Assembly (NCBI GenBank): GCA_964036045.1
Contig: OZ038378.1
Location: forward strand, 176,514,001-176,578,000
Reading direction: 5' to 3'
Source of the DNA: Eutreptiella sp. 'Long Island Sound 2002'
Lineage: Eukaryota; Protista; Euglenida
DNA length: 64,000 nucleotides
The translations under genes and the position numbers were made by a program. This document shows positions 17,400 through 59,856 of the stretch, piece by piece. Position 1 is the first letter of the stretch. Each line of letters begins with the position of its first letter. Under the pieces are notes generated by a model that worked only from the letters and a program-made list of their open reading frames with translations, ran no database searches and was not told the DNA's origin.

Positions 17400-20300
17400 A
17401 TGTCGCCGGAAGACCTCTCTGACGCGCTATCTCGCCTGGATATCGAGAAGCGGTTCCACCGGATGCTTGTCGAGCTTTGCGATGGAGAGCCGGACTATTT
17501 GCGCGATATCGAGCCAGAAGACGTCGTTGATCGCGTCTGCGCCGACGGTCGCTCCATTGCTGCGCCAGTGGCCAGGGGTCTAGTCCGAAAGCTCCGGCAA
17601 GGCCCCCTTGCGCCGCCGCTGCAGGCGACTGGCGCAGCCGCGCGCGGCCCGTGTTCGATGCCACAACCGTCGCCACAACCGTCGCCTCTGGACCGCACCG
17701 CTGGGGAAAAGCGTGACACGGGCGCCGACTCGAGCAACTGCGCTGTGACACTTTGGCGGGGCTGCGGCGAGGACGCCTCCCTCGTGCGGTGTGCGGTAAG
17801 GGCGTGGCCGCCGCACGGGAGCGGGCCCATCCGACGTAAGGTACTCACCGCGATCCTGGACCGGTCCGGGTCGATGGCCAAGGAATGGCGGCTGCTGGTC
17901 GATGCGGTGGTGCGCGTGGTCACAGACGACATCCTGGCGGATCCCTTCACCTCTGTTGCGTTGGTGGTGTACGACGGGACTGCCGTGCAAGTGCCGCTGC
18001 CAGACTCCTCCGAGGCGCTCCGAGACTTGCTGATCCGCCGGTACTCTCCGAACCGCGGCATCACGTGCTTCCGTGCCGCCTTCGAGAAGGCGCTTGAATC
18101 CGTCCAACAGGCGCTCGGCAAGCACCTTGCAGCGGGAGCCCTCCCCGAGGACGTGGACATCGCGGCGCTGCTGTTCACGGACGGGCAGGACACGTCACTC
18201 CCGCCGCAAGGCTGCCCCTCCGAGGCATCGGCCAGTGCCGCGCGCGCGGCAGGAGATGCCTTCCGCCGGGGCATCCGCGGTCTGGGCTGCGCCTCGTACA
18301 CCTCCGTCGCGGCGTTCGGCGAGCAGCACAGCCCAGACATGTGCCAGTACCTTTCGGACCGCTACACGTACATCAACCGCCCCGGAGTTCTGAGTGACTG
18401 GCTGGCCATGGGCCTGGACGAGATGCTCGGAAGTGCGGGGCAGTGCGCCCTCCGTGTGGTGCCCCCGCCTGGGGCCGCCCTAGAGGAGCCGCCGCCGGGG
18501 TCCTTGCCCTTGAATGTGTCGGGCGACCTGCGGCACCACGTCTGGCTCCGCCTCCACGGCGCGCCAAGCGGCACCGTCGAAGTGGAGGTCGCGATCACGG
18601 GCGCGCTTCCCGTGCGCGCGGAGATCGACATGAAAGCGGCACACACCGTGGCGACCGACAGCTTCGAGGACCACATGTTCCAGCTCGACAAGGCCGCGCT
18701 GCAGATGCGCGTGCTGGCGGGGGAGCTGACCCGGCAGCGCCCCTCCCTCCAGGACCTGGACCGCATCCGGAACCGTCTTGTGGAGGTCTTTGCCAAAGTG
18801 ACCCGCACGAAGGAAGCCGCCTCGGACATCAACGGGGCATTGCGCGGCCGGACGGCACTGCGCCTCCGGGCGCAGGAGGTGCACGCCATGCGGGACCGCC
18901 TGTCGTATGCCGTGGGCCACTTCGATGCACGGGACCAGGACACGCGCCAAATGGGCGGCGTGGGGATCAACGCGGTGCTGCGCGATCTCGGTCAGCAGAA
19001 GCCGCTGGGCGCCGACGCCGCTGGGGCGCTGGTGACGCTCGAGGCTTTGGCCGCTCTGCCGGCCCCCGAGCCGCTGTCCCCGTACGGCCGCCGCTTTGCG
19101 CGCGATCCGTACACGGGCTGCGACGCCCAGGTGCTCGCCGAGGCCGGGGACGCGCTGTTCTTCCAGCTCCACGACGTGCAGTTCGCGCCCTCCGGGGCCA
19201 TTGTGTCGGCATCCGATGGCGTTGACCTGGTCAGCCACGAGGCCTTCCTCGCCCTCTCCAAGGACGCCACCGCTGCGGTCACCGCCGACGGCGCGGCAAG
19301 CTTCACGCACGTCGGCCTGCCCCTGTACGCGACGCCGGGCCACTTCCTCCGCGTGCAGCAGCTGCTGCCCCAAGTGCTAAGCCGCCTGGCCCCCGTGGGC
19401 GCGGGGGCGGTCGGGGCCGAGCGCCGGCTGCTGGCGTTGCTGGGCCGTGCGTTGGCCGCCGGGCGCGTTGCGCGTGGCAGCCGCGGTGCGGCCTCGCGCG
19501 GCGACTATACGAGCGCGCTCCTGCACAAGGCCCGGGCGGTGCACGCGGTGCTGTCGGCGACCCCAGGGCCGGGCCACGGGTCCCTCTTGTCCCGGGCGGA
19601 GCGCGAGACTGCGGAGCTCCTGGAGGACCCCAATGCCCTGCGCGACGCCCCCGATCTCTACGCCGTCGCGGCCCTGGGCCTACTCGTGGCGTGGCCCGCG
19701 TCCCAAGTCGTGCGGCTCGGGCACGCCGTGGCTCGCGAGGCTCTGCGGCGGTCGGTGGCGGATGGGCTGCAGAGCGCCGGGGAGATGCAGCGGCTGTGGC
19801 TCGGGTGGACGCTGCTGGGGCCCCCGGAGGCGTCGGGTCCGTGGCTCGAGGCCCTTGTGCCGCCCCCGAACGGCGGTGACGCGGGGCCTCCGTTGCGGAG
19901 CACCGGCGGGTTCAACGCCCTCACCGCCGGGGACGAGCTGGAGGAGCTCGAGCGCGCCGCCCCCGGGGCGTGGGCCCCTCGCGCCGCCGGGGTCGAGGTC
20001 CTGCAGGGCCTGCTCGCGCGCCGGGCCCCGGCCGGAGTGCCAGGGCCCCACGAGTGCGCCACCGTCTGCGACGTGCTCCCGCGCTGGGCCCAGCCGGCGG
20101 AGTCTCAGGGGGGCCTCGCGGGGCTGTGGCAAAGGCTCGACTCGGCCATGGCCTCCGATGCCAAGCCGCAGCAGAGCGGCGCGTGGCTGCCGCGCCTTCC
20201 CGATGACCTGTGCCCCGCGTCGGGCCCCCTGCAGCTTTGCCGCGTCGTCCGTGAGCCCGGCGCCATGGCGGCGGTCATCGGGGAGTGTGTGCGGGGGTGT

Positions 20301-20960
20301 GCCGTGCCCGCCCCCAGCGGCGGAGACGGGAAGGCCGTCCCCCTGCGGGCGATGGTTGCCGCCGCCACGCGGGCGCTAGTGGCCCGCCGGACCCGCCTCG
20401 TGCAGGAGCATCCTATCTGCGGTGCTGCATACCCCCGGGTGAGCCCTTGTTTCAATGAGGAGCACGCGCGCGACATTTGGGGGGCCCCCGCCGCCCCGGC
20501 GGACGTGGCGTTGCACGCGAAGGCCCGGCGGCAGGTGTTCGATTCCGGATTCCGCTGGTGCGCGGTGTCGGTGACCGAGGCCCTCGTGGACAAGGAATAC
20601 CGGGCCATGGGGGGAACTTTCGCCTTTCCGAGCCCGTTGGACACCTTCGTGGAGGGCCTGCACCGCCGCACGCGCGACCTCCACGAGGAGTGGCGGGACC
20701 GCGACGCCCGGCAGGCGGACGTGCGCGCGGCGGCCGTCCGCGAGATGCTGCTGCGCCTGCGCTGGGACGATCGCGACGCAGTGGCGCGGGCGAAGTTGTC
20801 GCACATCGTCGGGGCCATTTGGGACGATCTTGCGGGCGTGCCGGCAATGGGCGGACCACTGTCCTCGGCCCTGTGGCTGCCGGATTGGCCGGGGGCCTCC
20901 GTGGGTCAGGCCGACGACCCGCTTCGGCGGGACTCGGAATGGGAAGTTGTCGCGTCTTGA
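17400..20960 (+). CDS. Intronless 1186-aa protein: N-terminal SAM-like domain, von Willebrand A domain, long uncharacterised C-terminus
   Basis: Long, very GC-rich ORF from ATG to TGA. vWA MIDAS elements are ILDRSGSM, GITCFRAAF and LLFTDGQD. The N-terminus MSPEDLSDALSRLDIEKRFHRMLVELCDGEPDYLRDIEPEDV resembles a SAM domain. Confidence 0.9.
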   Translation: MSPEDLSDALSRLDIEKRFHRMLVELCDGEPDYLRDIEPEDVVDRVCADGRSIAAPVARGLVRKLRQGPLAPPLQATGAAARGPCSMPQPSPQPSPLDRTAGEKRDTGADSSNCAVTLWRGCGEDASLVRCAVRAWPPHGSGPIRRKVLTAILDRSGSMAKEWRLLVDAVVRVVTDDILADPFTSVALVVYDGTAVQVPLPDSSEALRDLLIRRYSPNRGITCFRAAFEKALESVQQALGKHLAAGALPEDVDIAALLFTDGQDTSLPPQGCPSEASASAARAAGDAFRRGIRGLGCASYTSVAAFGEQHSPDMCQYLSDRYTYINRPGVLSDWLAMGLDEMLGSAGQCALRVVPPPGAALEEPPPGSLPLNVSGDLRHHVWLRLHGAPSGTVEVEVAITGALPVRAEIDMKAAHTVATDSFEDHMFQLDKAALQMRVLAGELTRQRPSLQDLDRIRNRLVEVFAKVTRTKEAASDINGALRGRTALRLRAQEVHAMRDRLSYAVGHFDARDQDTRQMGGVGINAVLRDLGQQKPLGADAAGALVTLEALAALPAPEPLSPYGRRFARDPYTGCDAQVLAEAGDALFFQLHDVQFAPSGAIVSASDGVDLVSHEAFLALSKDATAAVTADGAASFTHVGLPLYATPGHFLRVQQLLPQVLSRLAPVGAGAVGAERRLLALLGRALAAGRVARGSRGAASRGDYTSALLHKARAVHAVLSATPGPGHGSLLSRAERETAELLEDPNALRDAPDLYAVAALGLLVAWPASQVVRLGHAVAREALRRSVADGLQSAGEMQRLWLGWTLLGPPEASGPWLEALVPPPNGGDAGPPLRSTGGFNALTAGDELEELERAAPGAWAPRAAGVEVLQGLLARRAPAGVPGPHECATVCDVLPRWAQPAESQGGLAGLWQRLDSAMASDAKPQQSGAWLPRLPDDLCPASGPLQLCRVVREPGAMAAVIGECVRGCAVPAPSGGDGKAVPLRAMVAAATRALVARRTRLVQEHPICGAAYPRVSPCFNEEHARDIWGAPAAPADVALHAKARRQVFDSGFRWCAVSVTEALVDKEYRAMGGTFAFPSPLDTFVEGLHRRTRDLHEEWRDRDARQADVRAAAVREMLLRLRWDDRDAVARAKLSHIVGAIWDDLAGVPAMGGPLSSALWLPDWPGASVGQADDPLRRDSEWEVVAS

Positions 20961-30400: not shown

Positions 30401-30653
30401 CACAGGCGAGAACCATACGCCTGATGCAAGAAAGTCTTGGCGTGCAATCAATGGAAACCCTATCATTTGTGGTGGTCATATGGACAGATGGCCCAACAAG
30501 GTCAGCAGCACAGATTTTTTTGTGTGTGGAGGATGCAGATTGACTGGCGTTCATCGACTTGCGCATTGGTTGAGGTGGGTGAAGTCCTGTGTGTTGGATG
30601 TACTGATGCAGGTTGCCAGGGGCGTATCAACGTGTCAAAACATGTAAGCACTG

Positions 30654-31054
30654 CAGGCATCGGCGTTGGCCGCAGCCGAATTAGCCAACTAACCGCAGAG
30701 GCAAAGAAAAATGGTAAAAATGGAAAATTGGGGGGAAATTGGGGAAATTGGGGGGAAATTGGGGAAATTGGGGGGAAATGGGGAAATGTCAGAAAGTGCC
30801 AAAAGTACCTAGTGGGAAATATAGAAAAAATGTGTGAAATTCGTAGGAAATCGGAGAAAAATCGGAGAAAAATGAGACAACTTGGGACAAATTTCCCATT
30901 TTTCCGTGTCCCATTTTCCCCATTATTCCACAGCCTTGCCACCTTTCCCTCAGGTGCCTTTGGTGAATTTTGCCAGCCGAACTGGCCGACTGGAAAAATA
31001 GAAAAATTCCGACTAGCCAACAATGGCGGATTTTTTGGCTAGCGCCGAGGCTTG
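30654..31054. repeat. Interspersed repeat family with GGGGAAATT-like arrays, copy 1
   Basis: Homologous to about 54495-54900, sharing GCAGCCRAATTAGC, TGTGTGAAATT, TTTCCCATTTTT and GCCGAACT. Imperfect inverted ends CAGGCATCGGCG / CGCCGAGGCTTG. Confidence 0.75.
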
Positions 31055-31378: not shown

Positions 31379-32383
31379 TCAAGCGGAAGGAGAGGACTCG
31401 GACAGCGGACGCGGAGTTGCATCGCTCGATGTCACAAAAGGAAGTACATGGCTTGGCACACGCCCACTCCCCACAATCTCGAGCCGATCCTCATGCACAT
31501 CCACGTGAGCGTGGCACAATTCCTGACCCCCGCATGTCAGGGGCGAAGGGAAGGTCACGTGGTGGACCCCGGCAGCGTCCTGACTATACCCTCCGCTGTG
31601 GTCGTGCCCGCACAGGACCGCCACCACACACTCGCTTTCGTGGAGGATCGCAAGGGCCTCCTCGGCGTCGAAGCAAACGTTGCAGTAGTCGCCGGCGTTG
31701 GGGTGCAGCAGCACATGGCTCAGCACCAACACCCGGTCCTGCGCAGCGGCGGCGGACTGCACCTGCTCACGCAGCCACTCGCGCTGCCTGGCACCCAACG
31801 CCCCGTTGTAGGTTACCCACCGCCGTGCCGAGCCCTCGAGCCCCTGAAGCAGCCCACCGCCCTTCAGGACATCGTTTGGGTTGTGGCGCTGCAGCGCCTC
31901 CAGAGCCGCGGCATAGCCCACGGAGTCCGGGGAGTTGCCGATGATAGCTTCCTCGTACGGGTCCAGCACCAGCACCGTCCATCCCGGCACCGGGCGGAAG
32001 CAGTAGTACCCCGTCCCGCCGGGGCCACGTGCAGTGCGCAGGTGCCGGGCCAGGGTCGGGCGGTCGAAGTTGTACAAGTCGTGATTCCCGATGCAGTGGT
32101 ACACGTCGCACACACGGCACTGCCCGAAGAGGGCCATGACAGTCGCCATCGCGGCATCGCACTGCCGCAGCGCCGCGCATTGGCCGTCGAGCAGGTCGCC
32201 CAATTGGGCGACGAACTGCAGATCCGGCAGCGTGTTCCAGTGCTCCACCGCCTGAACGAGGCAGTCCAGGGCCCCGCGGTAGTGGCGCTTCTCGGTGCCG
32301 TCGAAATTCGTGCCATCCTCCGTGTCGCAGTATTGCACGTCCGAGATCACGCCAAAGCGCAACACTGGGGCGCATGCGGCCAT
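31379..32383 (-). CDS. ADPRM: Manganese-dependent ADP-ribose/CDP-alcohol diphosphatase (calcineurin-like metallophosphoesterase), intronless, 334 aa
   Basis: Motifs FGVISDVQY, QLGDLLDG, IGNHDLYNF, YNGALG, LSHV and LCGHDH are typical of ADPRM. Likely start is MAACAPVLRFG at 32383, downstream of an acceptor-like TTTGTGCAG. Confidence 0.92.
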   Translation of the reverse strand: MAACAPVLRFGVISDVQYCDTEDGTNFDGTEKRHYRGALDCLVQAVEHWNTLPDLQFVAQLGDLLDGQCAALRQCDAAMATVMALFGQCRVCDVYHCIGNHDLYNFDRPTLARHLRTARGPGGTGYYCFRPVPGWTVLVLDPYEEAIIGNSPDSVGYAAALEALQRHNPNDVLKGGGLLQGLEGSARRWVTYNGALGARQREWLREQVQSAAAAQDRVLVLSHVLLHPNAGDYCNVCFDAEEALAILHESECVVAVLCGHDHSGGYSQDAAGVHHVTFPSPLTCGGQELCHAHVDVHEDRLEIVGSGRVPSHVLPFVTSSDATPRPLSESSPSA

Positions 32384-35234
32384 GTGTCGACGGGGCACGA
32401 GGCCGAGATGACCTGCCCTGCACAAACACCGGAAGCGGGCACGCAGGTCTGCACATCGCCCCCACCCCCTCCACCCGTTGTCTACAGAGGCACTCCAGAA
32501 TGCTTGACAGAGCAGGCAGGGCAGGCACAGGGCGGTGCCGGCGTGAGGGGCTTGTGGCCATCCGGCGCGGGGGAGTCCCCATGCACGCCGGAGTGCGCAG
32601 ACACCTTGCGTGCCCCCATCTCTTGAGGTTCTCCTCGCTTTTAGTACCCCGCTATGCCTAAGGTAAGGCAAGAAGGCCACAGTGGTACTTTGTTGAGGAC
32701 CCAGAGCTCTCTTTGTTCCATAGAATGTGTGCCACGGGGGCCGCCGCCAGCCAATGTGTGACCCCGAGGGGTGTTCGACAGTTTGGGGGGCTGTAGGGGG
32801 GGGGGGGACCCCACCCCCCCTCCGAAGGGGGGGGGGGACCCCACCCCCCCCCTTCGTTGACCCAAACCCAGCACCTTTTCCGTCAGGCAACCCATCAGCC
32901 AAGGTCCGACCCGGAGGCCGGGTCGGGGTCAAAATCCTTTTTTGTGCTTTTCAGCCATTTTTGAATTCTCCACGAAATTCTGAGTATTTTGAGTACCAAC
33001 ACATAGGGTCGAACCAAAAAATTCCCCCTGCCGTATGCCTAAAACAAAATCTCCGGCGCCTCTGGCGCCGACAAAGCACATTGTTGCGTACGACAATTTT
33101 GGGGTCCGTAGAGGAGGGGGGGTGCCCCCCCCCCCCCTTTGGGGTCGGGTCCCGACCAGGATCGGCCCCCGTGATGTGTGCGGCCCCAAGACGGCACATG
33201 CTAACAAATTACTCGTTCGCGACTTGCGATACTATGGTGACGAGCAGCAATCAATGAGGCTGTTTGATGAGGCTGCCGGTTGTGCATGGACTTGGTGGGA
33301 CGCATCCGGATGGAGGGCTGGGTGGAAACACGTACCTGTCTGGGACCCTAAGCTCAATTGTTGTAACTTGGGCTCATGGTGCCGTCAGAGCAATTTCCAC
33401 ACGTTTGTTAGATCCCAATCATTACCGGCCCATCCCCCCCACACACCTTCCCCATTTCCCTGCATTGTTTCAAGCCCACCCTGTATAAAGCCCTTGTACA
33501 TGACTCCATGCGGACCCCTTCTTGCACCATTGGCTTGCAGCACTGATGTCAAGAGAAGCAAAAATGTGTGCCGATCTGTCAAACCTTGTGAGTGTTGTGC
33601 TGATGTCACGTCTTCTGTCTGTTTTAGTATGACCCCCTCTTAACCCACCTACACACCGGTGTGCGCATGTGTGTGGTGCATAGCAAAGGTGTTGTCGAAC
33701 AAGTGGAAGCGCAAAAAATATGGTGCAGGTCGTTAGAGGGACAACAACAACAACAACACCAACAATAACAACAACAACAACAACAACCATCGACATAGCT
33801 GCCCGGAAAAGGTGCCCAATCGGATATGACCCAAAAAGGTATGCAAAACAATGTACGCATATGGATTTCCGTAAAACTAAAAGTGCTTCGAAACTACTTC
33901 CTTTTGCAATAGGGGGCAAGCACCCGCACAACGACAAGAGCAACCACCAATCTTGTTGACCTTGAGTCCTTCACCTGCGACTTGCGAATTGCGATGACCT
34001 ATGTGCTTTATTTACCAAGCCTTTTTTTCACTCTCTTTCCTCCTTCACAAAGGGAAAAATTTTGAAATATGTTGGTAGCACAATCCTTCTTTCAACAACT
34101 TGACCACATCACATGTGCAAGCTCCAAATGAATTTTCCAAAAGCATCTCCATTGCATTTCAAACAGCTTTGAAATACAAAATTCCTAAATCCCAATGCCA
34201 ACATGACCAACTGTGTTTGTTATTTAGCATGGCACATGGGTGGAAAAAAGGCAAGCCGAAATCCCACATAAGCATGGCAAAGGCATGCATGGGGAGGAAA
34301 ACTTCGTAAGGGGGTAATTTCGGATGGGAAATTTCGTGTCTCAAAATAGCCGCAAAGTTTCCCATGCAAATCTGGGGGTCTTCACGAAATTTTCACAATT
34401 GTAGGTGCCAAGAATTTCTCCTCGGTGCTTTTATCACCTCTTAATCTGTGGGTCAGGGCTCTCTCATGCTGTGCACTTCTGCACATTGGCATGTATGCAC
34501 ACATTGACACGTACCTTTTGTTTAGCCCCTTCTCCATGGAACACTTGTTCGTTCGAAAAAGTACTCTGCAGAGTCAAGTGGAGCATTTGGTTGAGCCCTT
34601 GAAGGATGTTGCAGCCCAGAGGCGCTTTACCGTGAAGCTGAAGCGTGGTTTGTACAATGCCAAACCATGGTTTGGTTGGGATGACGAACAGAGGGGCGCA
34701 GCTGCTGAGCTCTATCAAGCTGTAGAGCTCCAAAAATGTCAGCTGCAATATGGGTTGTCATGTCTACTTGAATCCAATTTTTGTGATTGGGGTGTACAGT
34801 TTACTGTACAGAGTTACATAGCTCCAAAGGGACGTCTGAGGAAGATGAGTGACGTGGAGGCTAAGGTGGGGTCTAGGATGGCAAGCATGGCATTACCCTT
34901 GAGATGGTCCACCAAATTTCCTGCAGGTTTGTCATTGACCTCCCCAAAGATTCCTGCTATGAAATTTACCACCGCGGAATTGTCCCCATACAAAAATTTC
35001 TTTTTCTTTTTAGGGTATGACACATTCTGATCTTGGTGTTGATATCTTTGTTCGTGATGTATTTGCAACGAAAATTGACATAGTCTCATCTTATACTTAT
35101 CGACACAGCAAACAAACAAACATGAACACAAAGCAAAAACAAATAAACACTCACTATTTCACTTTTACAAAAACGACACAATCAACTACTCTCGGATCGC
35201 CATCTGAAGTTGCGTGCACATCCGGCTCTACTGA

Positions 35235-50302: not shown

Positions 50303-52463
50303 GTTGCAAGGTAAACGACTCTGCGGGGAATAGAAAGCGCAAACCTCAATGGCACGGATGCACGCCAACCACGGACATCAGCAAACCCCTCCCTCACTTT
50401 TGCAGGCCCAAGCCAAGCCTTGGGCTCATAGGGGACACGGCCCGATTTTCCTGCTTCATTGATAACAGATGGGTTTTTTTCCGAGAAACTGTGTTCATGA
50501 GCACACGCAGAAATCTCACAAAGAGATCCAGTACTCACAAAGCAGATACGGCTCTTGCATGACTGTATTGGCCTGGTGTAGTCATTGACCCCATGCAACC
50601 AGAAATGCCAGGATCCATTGCTCCATCCGTGCCAAAAGTACCCAAAATGCCCAAGGGGCCTACATGCTTCACCTCTCCTGTGCCATTGCGGTTGTTGGAT
50701 TCAAATGTTGGGGCTCCAGCGGGGAGAAATGGTTGGAGGCACAAGGGGGGCTATTGTGGTAGACTGCAGTGGGGAGGGAGGGGGTTCAGCGCCGTTGTGC
50801 ACTGCCAGAGGCTAACACAAACCGCACACACACAAACCGCGAGTGGGCCACCGCACGGACACAGGAGAGCGAAGGCCCACGCTGTGCACAAGGGGAAGCT
50901 GACCCACGCAATGGACTGCGGCCACCAGTAGGTAGGCCGCTACAGCCACACCAGAGGCTCAGATGTTGCCATCGTATTAGACGATTCACTGCGGTCACTA
51001 GCATGCGAGCTTCCACAGCCATGTGAGCGGGTCAAGGTCCATATTGTGCAACGTGGCAGGCTGACACACACAATGGAAAAATGCGGAGAGCAGGAAGGCG
51101 GGATTGGTTGTGTTTGGGAAAAGATGTTGCATGAGGTGTGTTTGAACATGCTACTTATGATATGATCGCCCATGTGCTGGGCATATCACCTCTTTGGCAG
51201 TGCGACTTTATCCCCTTGTCTATGAATGAGGTTTGTGTGCATGAAAGTGCACTGTTTGTTGTATTGGGCCTCTGGAAAATTGAAAGGTCCGGGGGGGGGG
51301 GGGGGGTTGAACCTCTTTTCCCGACTGCCCCCCCCTTGGGGCTCCAAAGGCAGACGGCCAATGGTGCCCCTTTTCTGTACCCCGCTGTAGGATGCAGGTG
51401 TTGATGCCAACTCTCCCCTGCAAGGCTGAAGGCTGCAGAGCAACAGCGTGAGAACAAAAAGCTCTTCAGTGACAGTTTCACGGGCACCTTTCGCTGTAAC
51501 AAGATGTACACAGTGTACTGAGGCTTGAGGGCGGCAAGGCTAAACCTACATGGTAGTGGTGGTGTGTATGGGAATTGGCATGGGTGTTCGACGAGATGCA
51601 TCGGGGTCGGCATGTGGGAGAGGTGTGCAGGGGGAAGGGGGATAGGAGTGCACGGAGACCTGCATGCTCAGGTATGCTGGCATACGCCGACAGCCCCAAC
51701 AGCCTCACGTCACATGATCCATGTAAACCCTGTGCAACCCACCTTGTCACGATGGTTGTTGGCGATATCCCGTGGGTTTGAACTGCTCCCCAGCCCCCAC
51801 AACCCGGATCCTGGCATCACATGTATTCACACAGCCGAAATGCCAAATTGTACCCATACAGGCAAACTGGCACATCCCACTCTTGTATGATACACTTGTT
51901 TGGAGTGCTCGTCAGACGAATCAACTGAGACACTTGTTCACTGCAGAAGCACCCCCCTCGCCCCCCCCCCCCCAAATACACGGGGATAATCCCCTCCCAT
52001 GGTACAAAATACCCAAAAAATAGGCCTGGGGCGGGCGGGTGGGGGGGGTTGGCATGATGCCTGGATGGATTGCTGTCTGAAGCTGGCGGCGCCTATTGGC
52101 CTCTCGCCACTTGCCCGTATCCTTTCCTCGAACCCTGTCCCTCCGTCGGTGGCAGTGCACATCGGCCTCTCACCACCGAGTGCCCTCCCTCACCCTGCCT
52201 GGCCCATCCATGCCCCCCCCTGCACACCATTCCTTTCCATTGGCAGTTTGTGCCAACGGAGCCCCCAGACTGTCGCTGTTTCACTGCTCTGCGTCAGGTC
52301 CACACGGAGGAGGGCAACGGCCCTCGCCATTGCCCAGGTGCGTCCAAGCGGAACCCCCATACCGGCGGTGGCTGTTGGGGGGAAGGGGGGTTTTATCCCT
52401 ACGACCGCTGCCCCGCACGGTCCCCCTTCCCCCCTCCCCTGGGGGCTGTCCTGCACCCAATAT

Positions 52464-53582
52464 TCACTTCTTGTTGTCCTGAAACTTTGCAGCAGCCACG
52501 GGCTCCCCTTCGCCTTCATCACTACTGTCCTCATCACTAAACTCGTGGTCTGCTGCTTCCCGCACATACAACTGCTCCGCATCGAGTGCTTGCACGCAGA
52601 ACGACTCACCGCACCTCACTTGCCCCCCCCCCTCCTGTGCTGCATCCGACCCATCAACAACCACAACTCGTGGCACCGTCAACACAACAGCAAACGTGCG
52701 GCCGCCCTGCGGAAACTGCAACTTCACGAAGGTACTTTCCCCTGGTCCAGGGACTGTGAAAGTGCGCAGGGGGTCCTCAGGTTCGCTACCCAAGCGCACG
52801 GGGCACGCTGCAGGAGGCACCGCCGGGGCGAGTCGCCGCCGCAATTTGCGTGAGGGATACTCTGCGTAAGCGGGTTTGTGGTTGATCCAGATGTTCACAA
52901 GGAGCGATATCCGCCGCGCGTCCTGCGCCGTGGGGCACACGCTGCCGATGAGGGCTTCGCTCAGGTCTGCAGGGGCGCCATGCAGTAAGCGGCCGTCGAA
53001 GCATATGTGCTTGCCACGCCGTGGGGGCGAGACCTGAAGTGCGCTGACGGTCTGGGGGATGTGCTCCAGATCCTGGTATTGCTTCTGCACGCACACTGTG
53101 GTTACGACAGTGGGGGCCCCAATGTTGCTGAGGTACGTCACGGTGCTCAGATGCGGGGGCACGTTAAGGCCATGTTCCTCCTTTGAGTAGTCCTTGTCCC
53201 AGTGGAATCCCACATCCGCGGTGTCCTCAATGCACAGTGTCCACCACTCAGCCCCAGAGCCCTTGGCATCAAAAGCAGGGTCCTTCTGGATATTGCATGT
53301 GTGAAAGCGGAAAATGTCGAGCACCACCTGCTCAATCAAAGAGGTTGGTGTGGCAGAAGCCGGCACCCAATAAGTATCCCCGCCACTGAGTTCATCATTC
53401 TCCTCTGCATCCCCAAGAGGCGTGGCTGAAAATGCGGCCGCGCAGCTGCTCACCAGCTGCTCTGTAATGCCCGCATCGCTGACGTCAATCGCATTTGTAA
53501 AAGAGCGGAAATTGGTGTTCAGGAGGCTCAGATCTACAGCACCGCGCACAACGCGGCATTGGTCATCTTGGGGCAGCTCCAT
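52464..53582 (-). CDS. 2OG-Fe(II) oxygenase-like protein, intronless, 372 aa
   Basis: GAEWW, FHWDKD (HxD), STVTYLS, FDGRLLHG (distal His) and RISLLVNIW (Arg) fit a double-stranded beta-helix dioxygenase. It has an acidic tail. Confidence 0.8.
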   Translation of the reverse strand: MELPQDDQCRVVRGAVDLSLLNTNFRSFTNAIDVSDAGITEQLVSSCAAAFSATPLGDAEENDELSGGDTYWVPASATPTSLIEQVVLDIFRFHTCNIQKDPAFDAKGSGAEWWTLCIEDTADVGFHWDKDYSKEEHGLNVPPHLSTVTYLSNIGAPTVVTTVCVQKQYQDLEHIPQTVSALQVSPPRRGKHICFDGRLLHGAPADLSEALIGSVCPTAQDARRISLLVNIWINHKPAYAEYPSRKLRRRLAPAVPPAACPVRLGSEPEDPLRTFTVPGPGESTFVKLQFPQGGRTFAVVLTVPRVVVVDGSDAAQEGGGQVRCGESFCVQALDAEQLYVREAADHEFSDEDSSDEGEGEPVAAAKFQDNKK

Positions 53583-53612
53583 GGGGGCAGCTGGCCGGGC
53601 ACTGCAAAGGCA

Positions 53613-53637
53613 GGAAAACAAATAGACACTCAGAAAA
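53613..53637 (-). other. Relic euglenid spliced-leader exon sequence
   Basis: The minus strand reads TTTTCTGAGTGTCTATTTGTTTTCC. Against the Euglena SL core TTTCTGAGTGTCTATTTTTTTTCG (recalled) it matches 22/24. It is not followed by GT, so it is not an SL RNA gene. Confidence 0.85.
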
Positions 53638-54494
53638 TACCCCCACCACCACAACCACTGTTAACGAGGGCTCCGTTGGACGTGTTTGGATGGATTCTGT
53701 TATTTCCTTGATATCTTTGGATAGATGCTGTTCCTTCCCAACGGCCTCTAGATGGGTGCTGTTACTTCTTGGAGGAGTTTGGATGGATGCTGTTGAAGCC
53801 CTCTGGATGATGCTGTGTCATTTTGGAGGGCTTTGGATGCATTGGAAACCCCACCTCAAAGTTTGGGGGGCTCCAAATCCCCAACCCCCCCCCCCCCCCC
53901 TGTACTTTTCAATTTTCCACCAACCTTCTTCGACAACAGGGTCAACCACCTCATGGCAGAGTGCCAAATATGGACATCCATCTTGTCAGAGTCAATGCTT
54001 TGTTTTTCCTTTGTTTGATATTTGTAGTTGCGCTATGGGGGGAATGTTTGCCCAGCGCGCGCCCGGCGTGCTACCTTTGTATTAAGTATCTCATCTCTAG
54101 CCCCAAGTTTATCCTCACCTTGGGAAGTCCCCCAAGTAGACCGCACTAGACCGCAAACCTTCTGTGCAAGACACCTTGTATAAGCCAAAATATGAGAATT
54201 CAACAACACAAAATGTCACTCACACCACTTCCAACCACCATCCTTGCCATAGTCATAAACTGGGTGCAAGGGATGGGCCAAATTCATAGACACGGCGAGA
54301 AGGTATTCCAAATTGTTTGGTGAGGTGGGGGCAAAAACAGGCACAAGTGGGGAATGGTCAAAAAGAGATGCCCGGCGCGCGCGCAGCACGCTAACGCTCC
54401 CCCATGGGCACAGCAGCAGCCATTGTGACAACTGAATGGCAAAAATGCAGTGCTGGTACCCAGGCTAGTACCTGCATGATGCACAGTGCATGCA

Positions 54495-54900
54495 CTGTCA
54501 GGATTCCACGTTAGCCGCAGCCAAATTAGCTGTCCAGCCGCAGGGGCTGGGGAAGATGGGGAAAATGGGGGGAAATGGGGGGAAATGAGGGAAAACGTGG
54601 AAAATTGGGGGGGAATGGGGGGGATGGGGGGAAGGATGGGGGACAATGGAGAAAAATGGGGAATTGTGAGAAATTGTCAAAAGTACATTGTGGGAAATGT
54701 ATTAGAAAGAATGTGTGAAATTGATCAGAGATAGGAGTAAAATCGGAGGAAAATGGGACAATTTGGACAACTTTCCCATTTTTTCCAGTCCCATATTCCC
54801 CATTTTTCCACAGCTTCGCCACCTTTCCTTCGGGTTCCTTTCATGAATTTTGCGAGCCGAACTAGCCCGCTGGAAAAATGGAAAATTTTTGCCACAAACT
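54495..54900. repeat. Interspersed GGGGAAAT-array repeat family, copy 2
   Basis: Homologous to 30654-31054. Confidence 0.75.
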
Positions 54901-57900
54901 TTGGGCAAATGGTCATTCTTGGGTCTTAAAATGTTGCACTGTCGGGGCATTTGGGCTGCTTGCTTTCTGGAGGCTTTTTGTGGAGGCTTGGTTTTTTCTT
55001 GGAGGCTCCTGGATGCTTGCTGTTTAATCTTGAAATTTCTCTATGTTTGCTCGTTATTCCTAGATGCTTCGGGATGGATGCTGTTAATTCTTGGTGGTTT
55101 CTCGATGGTTGCTATTAATTCCTTGAGGCTTCTGGATGGTTGTCGCCAGACTCATTGCCCACATAACACCCACGTGCGGAAGGGGAGATACCGGTGGCAG
55201 GCACCCCTATCACCATTTGATTGGATGTTAGTGACGGTGATGCCTGCAGGAAGCCATGAAAAGAACATTGTTGATGCTGGTCAAACCAATGGTCATACCT
55301 TTTAGAGCCCTGAAACACATGCACTGCCCTGTAAACTGATGTGTAGAATAATCCCAATACACACACCGCGCGTGCAACATGTATGGTATCCCCCCGCCCC
55401 CCAGTCCTAAAGTTCTCCCCAATTGGCCCCCTTAACGTGCATCCTGATGGCTCTAGGGTATTGTAAGAGATCCAGGAGCGGAAGTGAAGGACAAGATTTC
55501 CTGCTGTCTCATTCCAAACATTAGTGGACAAGCTTCTTACCCAGTCGTGAACACTGTACTTATTTGTGATCTGTTTGTGAGATTGTACAGCACGTTTCGC
55601 CTCTCAGCTATTGATACTGTCTCTCTTGTATGCGAAGCTGCACATTATCAGCTCATCAACTCCAGAGTGGCACAGTGGCAACCAAAGCAGCTCCTGAGCT
55701 GCATACCTGCATTTAGTGGCTCCTGCGTGACGGACCTGCGTGTAACAGCAGGGCAAGGAAACTTGATGCACAAGCAGCAACAGAGTAGATGCTGCTTCAT
55801 GCGTGACCGGCACCGAACAAGGTAACTGTCATGAACACTCACAGTAGTTCACAGCAGCAGGACGCAGCAGCAGGACGCAGCAGCAGCAGCAGCAGCAGGG
55901 CGCAAATGAATGAAACGGGGGGCAACAATGCAAATGTGTTTGTTTGCAGTGGTTTCTTAATTTGTATGGTTTTACCTCGAGCATTTGTTGCATATATTGC
56001 ATATTTATTGGATTCTAAACCAAACGATTGATCCTGATCTTCTTGGTAACCTGCTTTGCATTACTTTGCCGAGATTGTGTTGGACTACTTTGTGAAATCC
56101 AACATCATTTTGCAGTGGGAAACAAACATCTCTACTGAAGCAGGATACTAAGATAGTCTTTGTCTTGTCACGGCTTCCCGCTCCGCGTGAGGGATCTGCA
56201 GAAGGAAGTTGCAGCAAGGGGCACCGGCTGGCACCAGCTTGGCAGAGGTGGAAACGGAGGTACTAGGGACCAGGTCAGGAGAGCCACGGAATCCCATGAT
56301 TGCCATCGAGACATGTCAGGGGTTGCGTTTTTGGAGTGTCATGCGGCATCATTACACAAATGTCTGTCCCTGAGCCTTGCAAACCTTATGCCCTCGCGTG
56401 CCCTGCGGATGGTTTCAACATTTGAGTTGATTGGGCATTTGTTGCCCAAATCGCTATATTAATGCATGAAATCTTCCAAAAAAAAAAAAAACAGCTGCCA
56501 AGAGGGCAACAATACTGAACATCCCTCAACAAAGCCTCCGCAGCGCCTGCATCAACACCCAAGACAGATCACACATCGTTTGGGTGCAAGACGGGGAGGT
56601 CAGACAATTGAACCTGACGCCACAACAGCAGCGGCAAAAAAAGGCTGGTGGTCAACAGGGTAGACCAGGGTAACAATAACCGCTCGACAACCGGCGGTTG
56701 GCAGTCAACTGAGGCGACTTCGACCTGGTCGACCAGGCTGGGTCCAGAGGTGAACATTGGTACAAAGTCCTCATTGGACAATAGCCCCCCGAATAGAATT
56801 GGGAGGGGATGACAGAGAAATACAGAAACGTGCAGAGACGTACTACGGGATGGGGCCACTGAGACTATTGCCCCTCAAAAAGTATCGGTCGACAAAGGGG
56901 ACGGCCACGAAATATCGAATTCCCAAAAATGATCGCCATGTCGGTGCTGATCATCTTGAGATGCACAGGTTTGTGGCAAAACACTAGGCATGCAGCCCCC
57001 CCAAAATGTTTCCAGCATCCGTTTCTTGTGGGCTCGGTCGCCGCCAGAGGACTGACTCTTATGAAGTAGGCGGGGGTGAGGGTGGTGGGGTCTGTGGATC
57101 GGGCCCAGCGCCCCCCCCCCTCCCCTGAGATGCACAACGAAGTGCCTCATTTTGTCGACAGACATCGGCGGTAACCGCCAATCCCGTGATGCGCAGCCCC
57201 CACACGAGCGCCCAAAAGGAGCAGGCTACTGATGCAGTGATCTTCATGAAGCAGCGCTGAAAATTTTGCGGGATGTGTGCGGATCGCAAACATTCCCTGA
57301 CCCCTCTGAGTCTCCTGCTGTCACCCCTTCGCCCCAGGTCCGTCCCTCCAGTCTCTCCTGCACCCCTGCACCCAAGCCACCAACTCCCCTCCCCCATTCC
57401 TTGCATAAGAACGGGGGCAGCGGCAGATGATTAGGAAACCCGTCGGCGTGTGCAGTGGCCCTACCCCCTTTCAGTGCATCCTGGCAACGGTATGGATGTC
57501 TTCCCCACCGCACCCGTATAACCCAGGCTCCATGCGTCCCTCCCCCACTTCAGCCACGCTGCACACATCAGAAACTTCATAACAAGTGCAGTATGGCTCT
57601 GTGTCATTTCCTCAAACACAGAACAAATTCACTGCCCCATGGCCCCCACGCCCCGAACGATATACGGAGGCGCAAGAGAAGCGCGAGCTTGCGCCAAACT
57701 AAGCCTCCAGCCGATGTGAAGGGTCTGGCTCGGAGCAGGAGGCAAATGTACAGGCGCCAGTGTGTGCATCTGGGGGGGTCGTGCAGCGAGTCCCAGTGGG
57801 GACCCCCGCTGGTACCGCCCGTTTGTTCAACCCTCGTGGACACGCAGGGAAGACTTGGCGCATGTTTGGGTCAATGGTCAGGGATTTCGTGCTGTGCTGC

Positions 57901-58607: not shown

Positions 58608-59441
58608 TCACTTGCGCTTCTGCAGCTTCAGCTGGGCCTCTGCCAGGAACATTGGGATGCCATGCTCCCGACCGATGGTCCGCTCGGAAAGGTCCCCCAG
58701 CGTCTTCAGCAGCAGCGAGTCCAGCAGCTTGAGACCCCCACCGGGGCCCCCACTGGGGCTGCGGGCGTCGCGGGACGGCCGGTCCGGCATGAACAACAGG
58801 AACTGGTCCTCGTGGGGGAGGAAGCAGGAGGTCAGGCGATACAGGCCCTGGTCCTGGGTCTTATGGATCTTCCAGCCCGTCAGCTTGTACACGTTGTCCC
58901 GGTACTGCACCGTTTGCTTCTGGAACTCCTGCACCAACTTCTGGTGCAGCTTCTCCTTCTCTTCCAGCCGCGCCTTCTGCGCTGCGACCTCCGACTGGAG
59001 CGCGGCCAGGGCAACGGGCACGTTCTCTTTGTCGGGGGCGCTGGGAGGCTGCCGGGCAGCCTCTAGCTGCGCTTCGAGCGCGTCAATGCGCTGCTGCGCG
59101 AGGGGGGGGATGCCGCAGTGGAGGACCTTTGTGGTCTGCTCGTTGTAGGCCCCCTTGCCCACGAGACCTGTCAGCCTAGCGACCTCCTCCTCGAGCGCGT
59201 CCCGCTGCTTCACCAGGCGGCCGACCTCCTGCTGATGCCCTGCGGCCGCCGCCTCGCGCCGTCCCGCCTCTGCCTGCAGCGCGCGGTTCTCACGGGAAAG
59301 CCGCTCCACCTCCGAGCTCAATTGCTCCATCTGCCGGTCCCGGTCCCGAACCATCGTCTGCAGCCCTGAGAGTCGCGACTGCAGCGCAGTGCGGTCCTTC
59401 ACAGGCGTCGCTCGGACCATCTCTGCCTCGTGCCGCGTCAT
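58608..59441 (-). CDS. MAD1: Mitotic spindle checkpoint protein MAD1, last exon
   Basis: TTKVLH, YRDNVYKLTGWKI, LYRLTS, LKLLDS and GIPMFLAEAQLKL match the MAD1 C-terminal domain. Acceptor CCTCAG, phase 0. Confidence 0.88.
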   Translation of the reverse strand: MTRHEAEMVRATPVKDRTALQSRLSGLQTMVRDRDRQMEQLSSEVERLSRENRALQAEAGRREAAAAGHQQEVGRLVKQRDALEEEVARLTGLVGKGAYNEQTTKVLHCGIPPLAQQRIDALEAQLEAARQPPSAPDKENVPVALAALQSEVAAQKARLEEKEKLHQKLVQEFQKQTVQYRDNVYKLTGWKIHKTQDQGLYRLTSCFLPHEDQFLLFMPDRPSRDARSPSGGPGGGLKLLDSLLLKTLGDLSERTIGREHGIPMFLAEAQLKLQKRK

Positions 59442-59856
59442 CTGAGGCCGGCAGGTGGGCGGGATGGAGGGAGAGAGATTAGGGAGGGAGGGAGGGAGTT
59501 GGAGTTGGAGTTGGAGCAGGTGTTTGGACAAGGGCGTGTTTGCGCGCGATGCATACCACGAAACACACGTTGCAGACATATCCCAAACCCACCCTCAACC
59601 CACAAAAGGGTGCCCAACAGCCCAGCATACACACCATACCACAAGAGAACATGGAAGTGCAGGTACACCCACACTTTCACACCCAAGTTGACGACTCCTG
59701 CACAACGCTACGACCCACATCTTCTTCGTACTGGTACCGCAAAAACCGATCCCATGATCCCAAAAAGTGCGGAAACACGGGGTTGCGGTGTTTGGACAAC
59801 GGCGTGGTAGCGCAAGGGGGTGGGAGGGTGTGAAAGAGGATGGGAGGGAGGGACAC

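What the first reader, a model, noticed from the sequence alone, without database searches (positions are those of the whole stretch)
53580..53637. Genomic spliced-leader relic directly upstream of an intronless gene: an SL-tagged retrogene whose old leader may now serve as the acceptor tract
The minus strand reads TTTTCTGAGTGTCTATTTGTTTTCC-TGCCTTTGCAG-TGCCCGGCCAGCTGCCCCC-ATG. It matches the recalled Euglena SL core at 22/24, is sense to the gene, and ends 30 nt before the ATG. It lacks the GT donor of an SL RNA gene. The simplest reading is reverse transcription and reintegration of a trans-spliced mRNA, a process well established in dinoflagellates. The T-rich 3' half of the relic plus TGCCTTT forms a pyrimidine tract ahead of the AG at 53603-53602, so retrocopies could arrive with a ready-made trans-splice signal (inference). 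This also indicates the organism is a euglenid.
Basis: partly seen in the sequence, partly recalled or inferred. Interest (0 to 1): 0.85.

Follow-up and report, generated by a model that had tools for sequence, protein, structure and literature searches.

The report
Spliced-leader relic before intronless Euglena gene
A near-complete copy of the short tag that Euglena normally adds only to finished messenger RNAs is written into the DNA 30 bases ahead of an intact, intron-free oxygenase-like gene, so this gene was most likely copied back into the genome from a processed message; whether the old tag now helps the gene get a new one is untested.

Summary
It is sense to an uninterrupted 372-codon ORF, ends 30 nt before that ORF's ATG, and is followed by TG, not a GT donor. 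Twenty shuffles of the window never exceeded 18/26.

Contigs from four runs in two studies, which look like genomic DNA, carry the relic without any difference, so it is not a cDNA artefact.

The ORF is colinear with a stramenopile homologue, keeps 31 of 32 family-invariant residues and folds like a 2OG-Fe(II) oxygenase. E. gracilis genes average 8 exons.

The best reading is a retrocopy of a trans-spliced mRNA. The case is incomplete:
- The 3' end has only four A's and no target-site duplication.
- No parent gene was found.
- No RNA evidence was found.

The AG at 53603-53602 is the best-looking acceptor near the ATG, and about half of its pyrimidine tract comes from the relic. Its use is not shown.

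This scan has already noted many similar SL relics elsewhere in this genome. I found no paper reporting them in euglenids. They are published for dinoflagellates and, as candidates, for Paulinella. I rate it a new member of a known kind, of moderate interest.

The parts
53613..53638 (-). Spliced-leader relic, 26 nt, 23/26 to the published E. gracilis SL. It is followed by TG, not GT.
   Evidence: present with 0 differences in contigs of four runs
53583..53612 (-). 30-nt spacer, the presumed 5' UTR of the copied mRNA. It contains the candidate trans-splice acceptor CAG at 53604-53602. The 20 nt before that AG are 16/20 pyrimidine, 11 of them from the relic. A second, weaker AG lies at 53592-53591.
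   Evidence: acceptor consensus from PMC11170887; usage not shown
52464..53582 (-). Uninterrupted CDS of 372 codons plus TGA, encoding a member of an uncharacterised family with a 2OG-Fe(II) oxygenase-like fold (HxD at 127-129, H201, R224).
   Evidence: ORF; colinear with P0002, 45% identity over aa 1-315 from the first residue; 31/32 invariant columns kept; AF2 mean pLDDT 79 and all Foldseek PDB hits are 2OG oxygenases; no Pfam hit
52391..52463 (-). Presumed 3' UTR, at most 73 nt, ending in ...GGGATAAAA. The four A's (52394-52391) are the only possible poly(A) remnant.
52030..52390 (.). High-copy element of about 350 nt that abuts the 3' UTR and begins with a poly-C run (minus-strand reading). 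It sets the outer limit of the retrocopy. Its strand and class are unknown.
   Evidence: depth of 1e3-9e4 against about 10 for unique DNA; 81% identical copies in L002 and L003, with unrelated sequence before the poly-C
53639..53667 (-). G-rich 5' flank directly ahead of the relic (..ACAGTGGTTGTGGTGGTGGGGGT). It has no pyrimidine tract and no second relic.
53668..53860 (-). Low-copy tandem array with a 31-nt period (unit begins ACAGCATCCATCCAAA) upstream of the relic. It is non-genic flank covered by the same single-copy contigs as the relic.

Best explanation
The segment 53638..~52391 on the minus strand is about 1.25 kb: SL, a 30-nt 5' UTR, a 1,119-nt CDS and a 3' UTR of at most 73 nt. I read it as a DNA copy of a mature, trans-spliced mRNA of Euglena (most likely E. 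gracilis) that was reverse-transcribed and integrated at this locus, producing an intronless gene that still carries the leader. That the sequence comes from the SL exon alone, not from an SL-RNA gene, is shown by direct reading. That it is in the genome is shown by the run contigs. Reverse transcription by a resident retroelement is inferred. The copy looks functional or very young, because the ORF is intact and the family-invariant residues are kept. To be expressed it must be transcribed from upstream and receive a new SL. The most likely acceptor on sequence is CAG at 53604-53602, whose pyrimidine tract is half relic and half old 5' UTR. This last step is inference.
For: - The relic matches the published SL at 23/26, against at most 18/26 in shuffles.
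- The match stops at the SL exon end, TG follows rather than GT, and the ATG lies 30 nt on.
- Sequence downstream of the relic is single-copy at a depth of about 10-11, so it is not the head of a repeat family.
- Contigs of four runs in two studies span the relic plus more than 130 to 400 nt of non-genic upstream DNA with 0 differences.
- The ORF is colinear with a homologue from residue 1, with no intron-sized gaps.
- E. gracilis genes average 8 exons for a 1,149-bp CDS (PMC11252322).
- 31 of 32 invariant and 55 of 59 near-invariant family columns are kept.
- If the 3/26 relic mismatches reflect neutral decay, an unselected ORF would stay open with P = 0.027. At the lower confidence bound of 2.4% divergence, P = 0.45.
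- AG 53603-53602 has the best pyrimidine tract (16/20) plus a CAG among all AGs within 180 nt of the ATG.
Against: - There is no poly(A) run (only AAAA) and no target-site duplication longer than chance.
- No parent or paralogue above 50% identity was found in two large protein collections. Exon-sized ORFs under about 72 aa could not be seen.
- No RNA run holds the locus. The exact protein is known only from this genome assembly, and no partial transcript-derived protein was found. Expression and the position of any new SL are therefore unknown.
- The three relic mismatches could instead come from a variant SL-RNA gene or from RT errors, which would weaken the age argument.
- The candidate tract is T-rich, whereas E. 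gracilis outron tracts are typically C-rich.
Confidence: 0.68

Rival explanations
1. In-place replacement. A full-length cDNA of the gene's own trans-spliced mRNA recombined with, or replaced, the original intron-bearing locus. All introns were erased and the SL was left behind, so there never was a separate parent copy.
For: No parent or paralogue was found, and there is no poly(A) or TSD as TPRT would leave. RT-mediated intron loss by recombination is the model favoured for kinetoplastids (PMC11613528).
Against: The SL has no homology at a native locus, so the 5' crossover would need illegitimate joining. The parent search was blind to short exons. Repeats abut the unit on its 3' side, as expected for insertion into repeat-rich DNA.
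Confidence: 0.12
2. Silent processed pseudogene. The unit is a recent retrocopy that is not transcribed or trans-spliced, and its open frame simply reflects youth.
For: No RNA run holds at least a twentieth of its words. The protein and its fragments are absent from transcript-derived entries of a 15-billion-protein collection. At 2.4% divergence an unselected ORF stays open with P = 0.45.
Against: The point estimate of relic divergence (11.5%) gives P = 0.027 for an open frame, before counting indels. All catalytic-type residues are kept. Many RNA runs are not indexed, so absence is weak.
Confidence: 0.3
3. The SL-like 26-mer is the head of a different SL-led mobile element, or a fragment of an SL-RNA gene captured at the DNA level, and is unrelated to a native intronless gene that happens to lie downstream.
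For: SL 23-mers sit next to another high-copy repeat at about 5 other places in the genome (joint 53636>54038). Earlier scan notes describe LINEs that begin with the SL (untested here).
Against: Retroelement copies are truncated at the 5' end, not the 3' end, so an SL head should be followed by the rest of its own RNA. The 30 nt and the CDS that follow are single-copy. The match ends exactly at the SL exon boundary with no GT, which DNA-level capture would not respect. The relic is sense to the ATG and only 30 nt from it.
Confidence: 0.05
4. Chance match or assembly/cDNA chimera.
For: None beyond the lack of a poly(A) tail.
Against: Shuffles reach at most 18/26 against 23/26 observed. Contigs from four runs in two studies run through the relic into non-genic repeats at single-copy depth with 0 differences.
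Confidence: 0.01

Closest known systems
Relict spliced leaders and 'mRNA recycling' in dinoflagellates (Slamovits & Keeling 2008, as cited in PMC9311404; Symbiodinium retrogenes, PMC5585692)
   Same: A genomic copy of the SL lies in sense directly upstream of an intron-poor gene. It is explained by reverse transcription and reintegration of a trans-spliced mRNA, and the copy must then be trans-spliced again.
   Different: The lineage (Euglenozoa) and the SL differ. In dinoflagellates the relic is typically seen in transcripts, truncated at an AG inside the SL and often in tandem. Here there is a single near-full-length relic, no transcript evidence, and the best candidate acceptor lies 11 nt downstream of the relic, which would remove it from the mRNA.
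Candidate mRNA recycling in Paulinella micropora (PMC9311404)
   Same: The operational criterion is the same: an SL hit less than 100 bp upstream of a gene start. Six verified candidates were found there, some of them single-exon.
   Different: Those candidates were checked against RNA-seq and this one could not be. The organism and SL are different.
LINE-mediated processed retrogenes (mammalian L1 type)
   Same: An intronless copy containing only 5' UTR, CDS and 3' UTR sits at a repeat-rich site.
   Different: The defining poly(A) tail and target-site duplication are not detectable here. No parent was identified.
Euglena SL-RNA genes
   Same: They share the 26-nt SL exon sequence.
   Different: There is no GT donor after the exon, and a conserved protein-coding ORF starts 30 nt downstream. 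No 5S rRNA or other RNA family is found in the window.
Other SL relics noted by this scan in the same genome (s1-222727, s1-197869, s1-199741 and others)
   Same: The same pattern: an SL relic in front of an intact intronless gene. One note names a multi-exon parent, and another reports a fresh SL ahead of the relic.
   Different: Those are AI notes that I did not check. This locus lacks a parent, a poly(A) tail and RNA support.

Membership tests
SL-bearing retrogene (recycled trans-spliced mRNA) | Genomic copy of the organism's own SL exon, sense to the coding sequence and closely upstream of it | tested here: met
   23/26 to the published E. gracilis SL, 30 nt before the ATG
SL-bearing retrogene (recycled trans-spliced mRNA) | The copy stops at the SL exon end: no SL-RNA intron, no GT donor | tested here: met
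   TGCC follows the relic and the conserved ORF starts 30 nt later
SL-bearing retrogene (recycled trans-spliced mRNA) | Introns absent where the parent gene or orthologues have them | tested here: inconclusive
   The CDS is uninterrupted and colinear with a homologue, and the species averages 8 exons per gene. No parent or euglenid orthologue was found for comparison.
SL-bearing retrogene (recycled trans-spliced mRNA) | Poly(A) remnant at the 3' end | tested here: not met
   Only AAAA at 52394-52391, before a high-copy repeat. No window with 10 or more A in 15 nt occurs in the 1.26 kb downstream.
SL-bearing retrogene (recycled trans-spliced mRNA) | Target-site duplication flanking the insert | tested here: not met
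   The longest shared word between the flanks is a 10-mer that belongs to the downstream repeat, not to the junctions.
SL-bearing retrogene (recycled trans-spliced mRNA) | Present in genomic DNA, not only in cDNA | tested here: met
   Single-copy-depth contigs of 4 runs in 2 studies span the relic and its non-genic flank with 0 differences. That these runs are DNA is inferred from their depth pattern.
SL-bearing retrogene (recycled trans-spliced mRNA) | Transcripts carrying a new SL, with or without the relic | not testable with these tools
   No RNA run holds the locus, and the single read-laying run went to DNA-like contigs.
SL-RNA gene | GT donor directly after the SL exon, followed by the SL-RNA intron | tested here: not met
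   TG follows, then a coding ORF. Rfam finds nothing at gathering score in the window.
2OG-Fe(II) dioxygenase superfamily (the gene product) | Double-stranded beta-helix fold with an HxD...H metal triad | tested here: met
   The AF2 model (pLDDT 79, pTM 0.83) hits only 2OG oxygenases in the PDB, with E about 1e-4 and modest TM of 0.3-0.6. H127, D129 and H201 are invariant in the family alignment. Triad geometry was not inspected.
2OG-Fe(II) dioxygenase superfamily (the gene product) | Match to a curated sequence family | tested here: not met
   No Pfam family at E of 1 or below. No PDB sequence match with the family profile.

The most novel reading that the evidence does not exclude
In euglenids, retrocopies of trans-spliced mRNAs arrive with part of their own re-activation signal. 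The U-rich 3' half of the fossil leader becomes the polypyrimidine tract for the first AG in the old 5' UTR, here CAG 53604-53602. Any read-through transcript can then be capped by a new SL, and the relic is discarded as outron. That would be a different route from the dinoflagellate one, where an AG inside the relic is used and the relic stays in the mRNA.
Probability: 0.3. Interest if true: 0.7.

Novelty: new member of a known kind. Interest (0 to 1): 0.5.

Why it matters
Recycling of trans-spliced mRNAs into new genes is documented for dinoflagellates and proposed for Paulinella. I found no paper reporting it in euglenids. If such loci are real and expressed in Euglena, they bear on three questions:
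- how an intron-rich, repeat-laden 2-Gb genome gains intronless genes;
- how a promoterless retrocopy can be rescued by trans-splicing;
- how gene models should be built, since SL k-mers would mark retrogenes.

This locus alone is a modest data point. The relic is clear, but the 3' hallmarks, the parent and the RNA evidence are missing.

Tried and rejected
- **RNA evidence.** The look-up of sequencing runs listed no RNA holder. The four runs I laid behave like genomic DNA, so neither the 5' end nor expression could be read.
- **Exact-protein look-up.** It found only the window's own assembly. L001 is 100% identical to the window, so it gives no independent or transcript contig.
- **Parent search.** The full protein found nothing above 45% identity apart from itself. 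A 131-aa central piece found nothing above 47% over most of its length. The exhaustive representative search found at most 50%, and because it clusters at 50% it would hide a closer paralogue. Exon-sized ORFs were out of reach.
- **Poly(A) and TSD scan.** Negative. The 10-mer shared between the flanks belongs to the downstream repeat, as shown by L002. I therefore dropped my idea that the 31-nt array had been split by the insertion.
The downstream element is a repeat of about 350 nt that starts with poly-C, but its class and strand could not be set.
- **38-nt inverted repeat with G16** at 51273-51309 and 53882-53919, which brackets the gene. I considered it as transposon ends. I rejected this because I read no matching flanks (no TSD), only 38 nt are shared, and such G-run elements are common.
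- **Second SL-like site** at 35159 (19/26). It lies in T/G-rich low complexity with no ORF behind it.
- **Other checks.** Rfam, Pfam and PDB sequence search found nothing.

Full report
**What is in the sequence.** Reading the minus strand, 53638..53613 is ATTTTCTGAGTGTCTATTTGTTTTCC. The spacer TGCCTTTGCAGTGCCCGGCCAGCTGCCCCC follows at 53612..53583, and the ATG is at 53582-53580. The SL of E. gracilis is printed as ACTTTCTGAGTGTCTATTTTTTTTCG in PMC6242988, and the same core is used as an SL primer in PMC5654406. The relic matches at 23 of 26 positions, with mismatches at positions 2, 20 and 26. The exact 17-mer core is unique in the window. A full scan finds 19/26 as the next best site and at most 18/26 in 20 shuffles.

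**It is genomic.** The four runs I could lay are kept as contigs of unrecorded kind. Unique parts of the stretch, including non-genic flanks, sit at a flat depth of about 10-25, while repeats reach 1e3-4e5. That is the pattern of genomic DNA.
- Contigs of X1 (52303-54064), X2 (52425-54041) and X3 (52303-53899) cover the relic with no differences.
- A contig of X4, from another study and organism label (53143-53769), does the same.
- No variant is listed in the relic.
- One of these data sets may be the source of the assembly. X4 at least is a second study.

Depth in the bin containing the relic is about nine times the single-copy level. SL 23-mers also appear in other contigs. I take both to mean that the SL sequence is multi-copy in this organism, as expected for its own SL (inference).

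**The gene.** The ORF 53582..52464 has 372 codons.
- It aligns from its first residue with a Pinguiococcus protein at 45% identity over residues 1-315, with only small gaps. The ATG is therefore the real start, and no intron interrupts the coding region.
- The family is large, with 1,725 representatives at E of 1e-3 or below. By the few names given, it is mostly stramenopile and metagenomic.
- The window protein keeps 31 of 32 columns that are invariant in 13 other members, and 55 of 59 near-invariant columns.
- There is no Pfam or PDB sequence match.
- An AlphaFold model (pLDDT 79) hits only 2OG-Fe(II) oxygenases, which fits the invariant HxD...H...R pattern.
- E. gracilis genes average 8 exons for an average CDS of 1,149 bp (PMC11252322), so an intronless 1,119-bp CDS is atypical.

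**Limits of the copied unit.** Two other loci of the same assembly, found through an ORF that overlaps the downstream repeat, show that a high-copy element of about 350 nt begins with a poly-C run at 52390. The sequence before the poly-C is unrelated in each copy. The unit therefore ends at or before 52391. That leaves a 3' UTR of at most 73 nt ending in GGGATAAAA. The four A's are the only possible tail remnant. There is no A-rich window downstream and no TSD. The whole unit of about 1.25 kb (SL, 30 nt, CDS, 73 nt) has the shape of a compact mRNA, but the 3' hallmarks of retroposition are absent or erased.

**Parent and expression.** The exact protein is on record only from this assembly. No paralogue above 50% identity and no partial protein from transcript assemblies turned up, and no RNA run holds the locus. 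These negatives are weak for three reasons. Exon-sized ORFs under about 72 aa were outside the length filter. The representative library hides relatives above 50% identity. Many RNA runs are not indexed.

On the other side, suppose the 3/26 relic mismatches reflect neutral decay (11.5%, exact 95% interval 2.4-30%). An unselected ORF of this sequence would then remain open with probability 0.027, or 0.45 at the lower bound. Together with the retained invariant residues, this mildly favours a gene under selection, or a very young copy whose mismatches come from a variant SL or from RT errors.

**Most likely mechanism.** A trans-spliced, polyadenylated mRNA was reverse-transcribed and integrated. 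The RT source is inferred. Earlier scan notes describe SL-headed LINEs in this genome, which I did not test. Alternatives:
- In-place replacement of the original locus by its own cDNA would explain the missing parent.
- A silent processed pseudogene remains possible.
- An unrelated SL-headed element is unlikely, because the sequence after the relic is single-copy and the match ends exactly at the SL exon boundary.
- Chance and assembly artefact are excluded.

**The acceptor idea.** Among all AGs in the 180 nt before the ATG, the one at 53603-53602 has the most pyrimidine-rich 20-nt tract (16/20) and the CAG motif. Eleven of those 20 nt are relic. The AG inside the relic (53630-53629) has a poor, G-rich upstream context (9/20). 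E. gracilis outrons end in CAG with a pyrimidine tract that is typically C-rich (PMC11170887), whereas this tract is T-rich (11 T, 5 C). The site is therefore plausible but not typical. TTTGCAG lies 11 nt into the old 5' UTR, which suggests it may already have been an alternative acceptor in the source gene (inference). No RNA data were available to decide. An earlier scan note reports the new SL ahead of the relic at two other genes, which would be the dinoflagellate-like outcome.

**Comparison and novelty.** The pattern is that of 'mRNA recycling' in dinoflagellates and the candidate cases in Paulinella (PMC9311404; PMC5585692). Five full-text searches found no report for euglenids, though subscription journals are not covered. 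A kinetoplastid study infers RT-mediated intron loss but reports no SL relics (PMC11613528). This scan has already flagged many SL relics elsewhere in the same genome. I used those notes as leads only. I file this locus as a new member of a known kind: a clear relic and an incomplete retrocopy signature, with an attractive but untested twist about how it could be re-expressed.

Noticed in passing
window 54038-54380 (and 53948-54600 more loosely): A very high-copy element of about 340 nt (summed depth 5e4-4e5 against about 10 for unique DNA). Related GC-rich motifs (GCGCGC..GGGCA..CATTCCCC) occur at both ends. In 4-5 contigs per run, its end at 54038 is joined to an SL 23-mer, so SL-led sequences sit beside copies of this repeat at about five other places in the genome.
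   Followed up: partly
window 51273-51309 and 53882-53919: A 38-nt inverted repeat (TGGAAAATTGAAA..G16, 92% complementary) brackets the gene and the downstream repeat, 2.57 kb apart. I read no TSD at its outer edges. Many contigs break at the G-runs.
   Followed up: partly
window 53668-53860 and 54991-55150: Two arrays of a 31-nt tandem unit (ACAGCATCCATCCAAA...). A single similar unit ends the downstream high-copy repeat (52076-52047) and is also present in L002.
   Followed up: partly
window 54549-54674: A G-rich tandem repeat with a 10-nt period (GGGGAAAATG-like, 10-11 copies). A related stretch at 30648-31008 is 81% identical to 54590-54888.
   Followed up: no
window 52464-53582 (protein): The closest named relatives are stramenopiles (Pinguiococcus at 45%, Hondaea, diatoms). 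None of the listed hits is named as a euglenozoan. The acidic C-terminal tail also aligns with the Pinguiococcus protein. This may be a laterally acquired gene.
   Followed up: no
window 58611-59579 (-): This ORF matches the C-terminal third of the MAD mitotic-checkpoint protein (Pfam PF05557, positions 426-659 of 661). It is presumably the last large exon of a multi-exon gene, about 5 kb upstream of the relic on the same strand.
   Followed up: no
window 31382-32932 (-) and 17400-20960 (+): Two more long uninterrupted ORFs: 517 aa with a calcineurin-like phosphoesterase domain, and 1,186 aa with no Pfam match in a stretch of 63-73% GC. Neither has an SL-like sequence of 18/26 or better nearby.
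   Followed up: partly
window 53583-53654 (-): The relic and spacer are in frame with the ORF and free of stops, giving a hydrophobic, signal-peptide-like extension from a TTG. There is no upstream in-frame ATG, so it is probably not translated.
   Followed up: no
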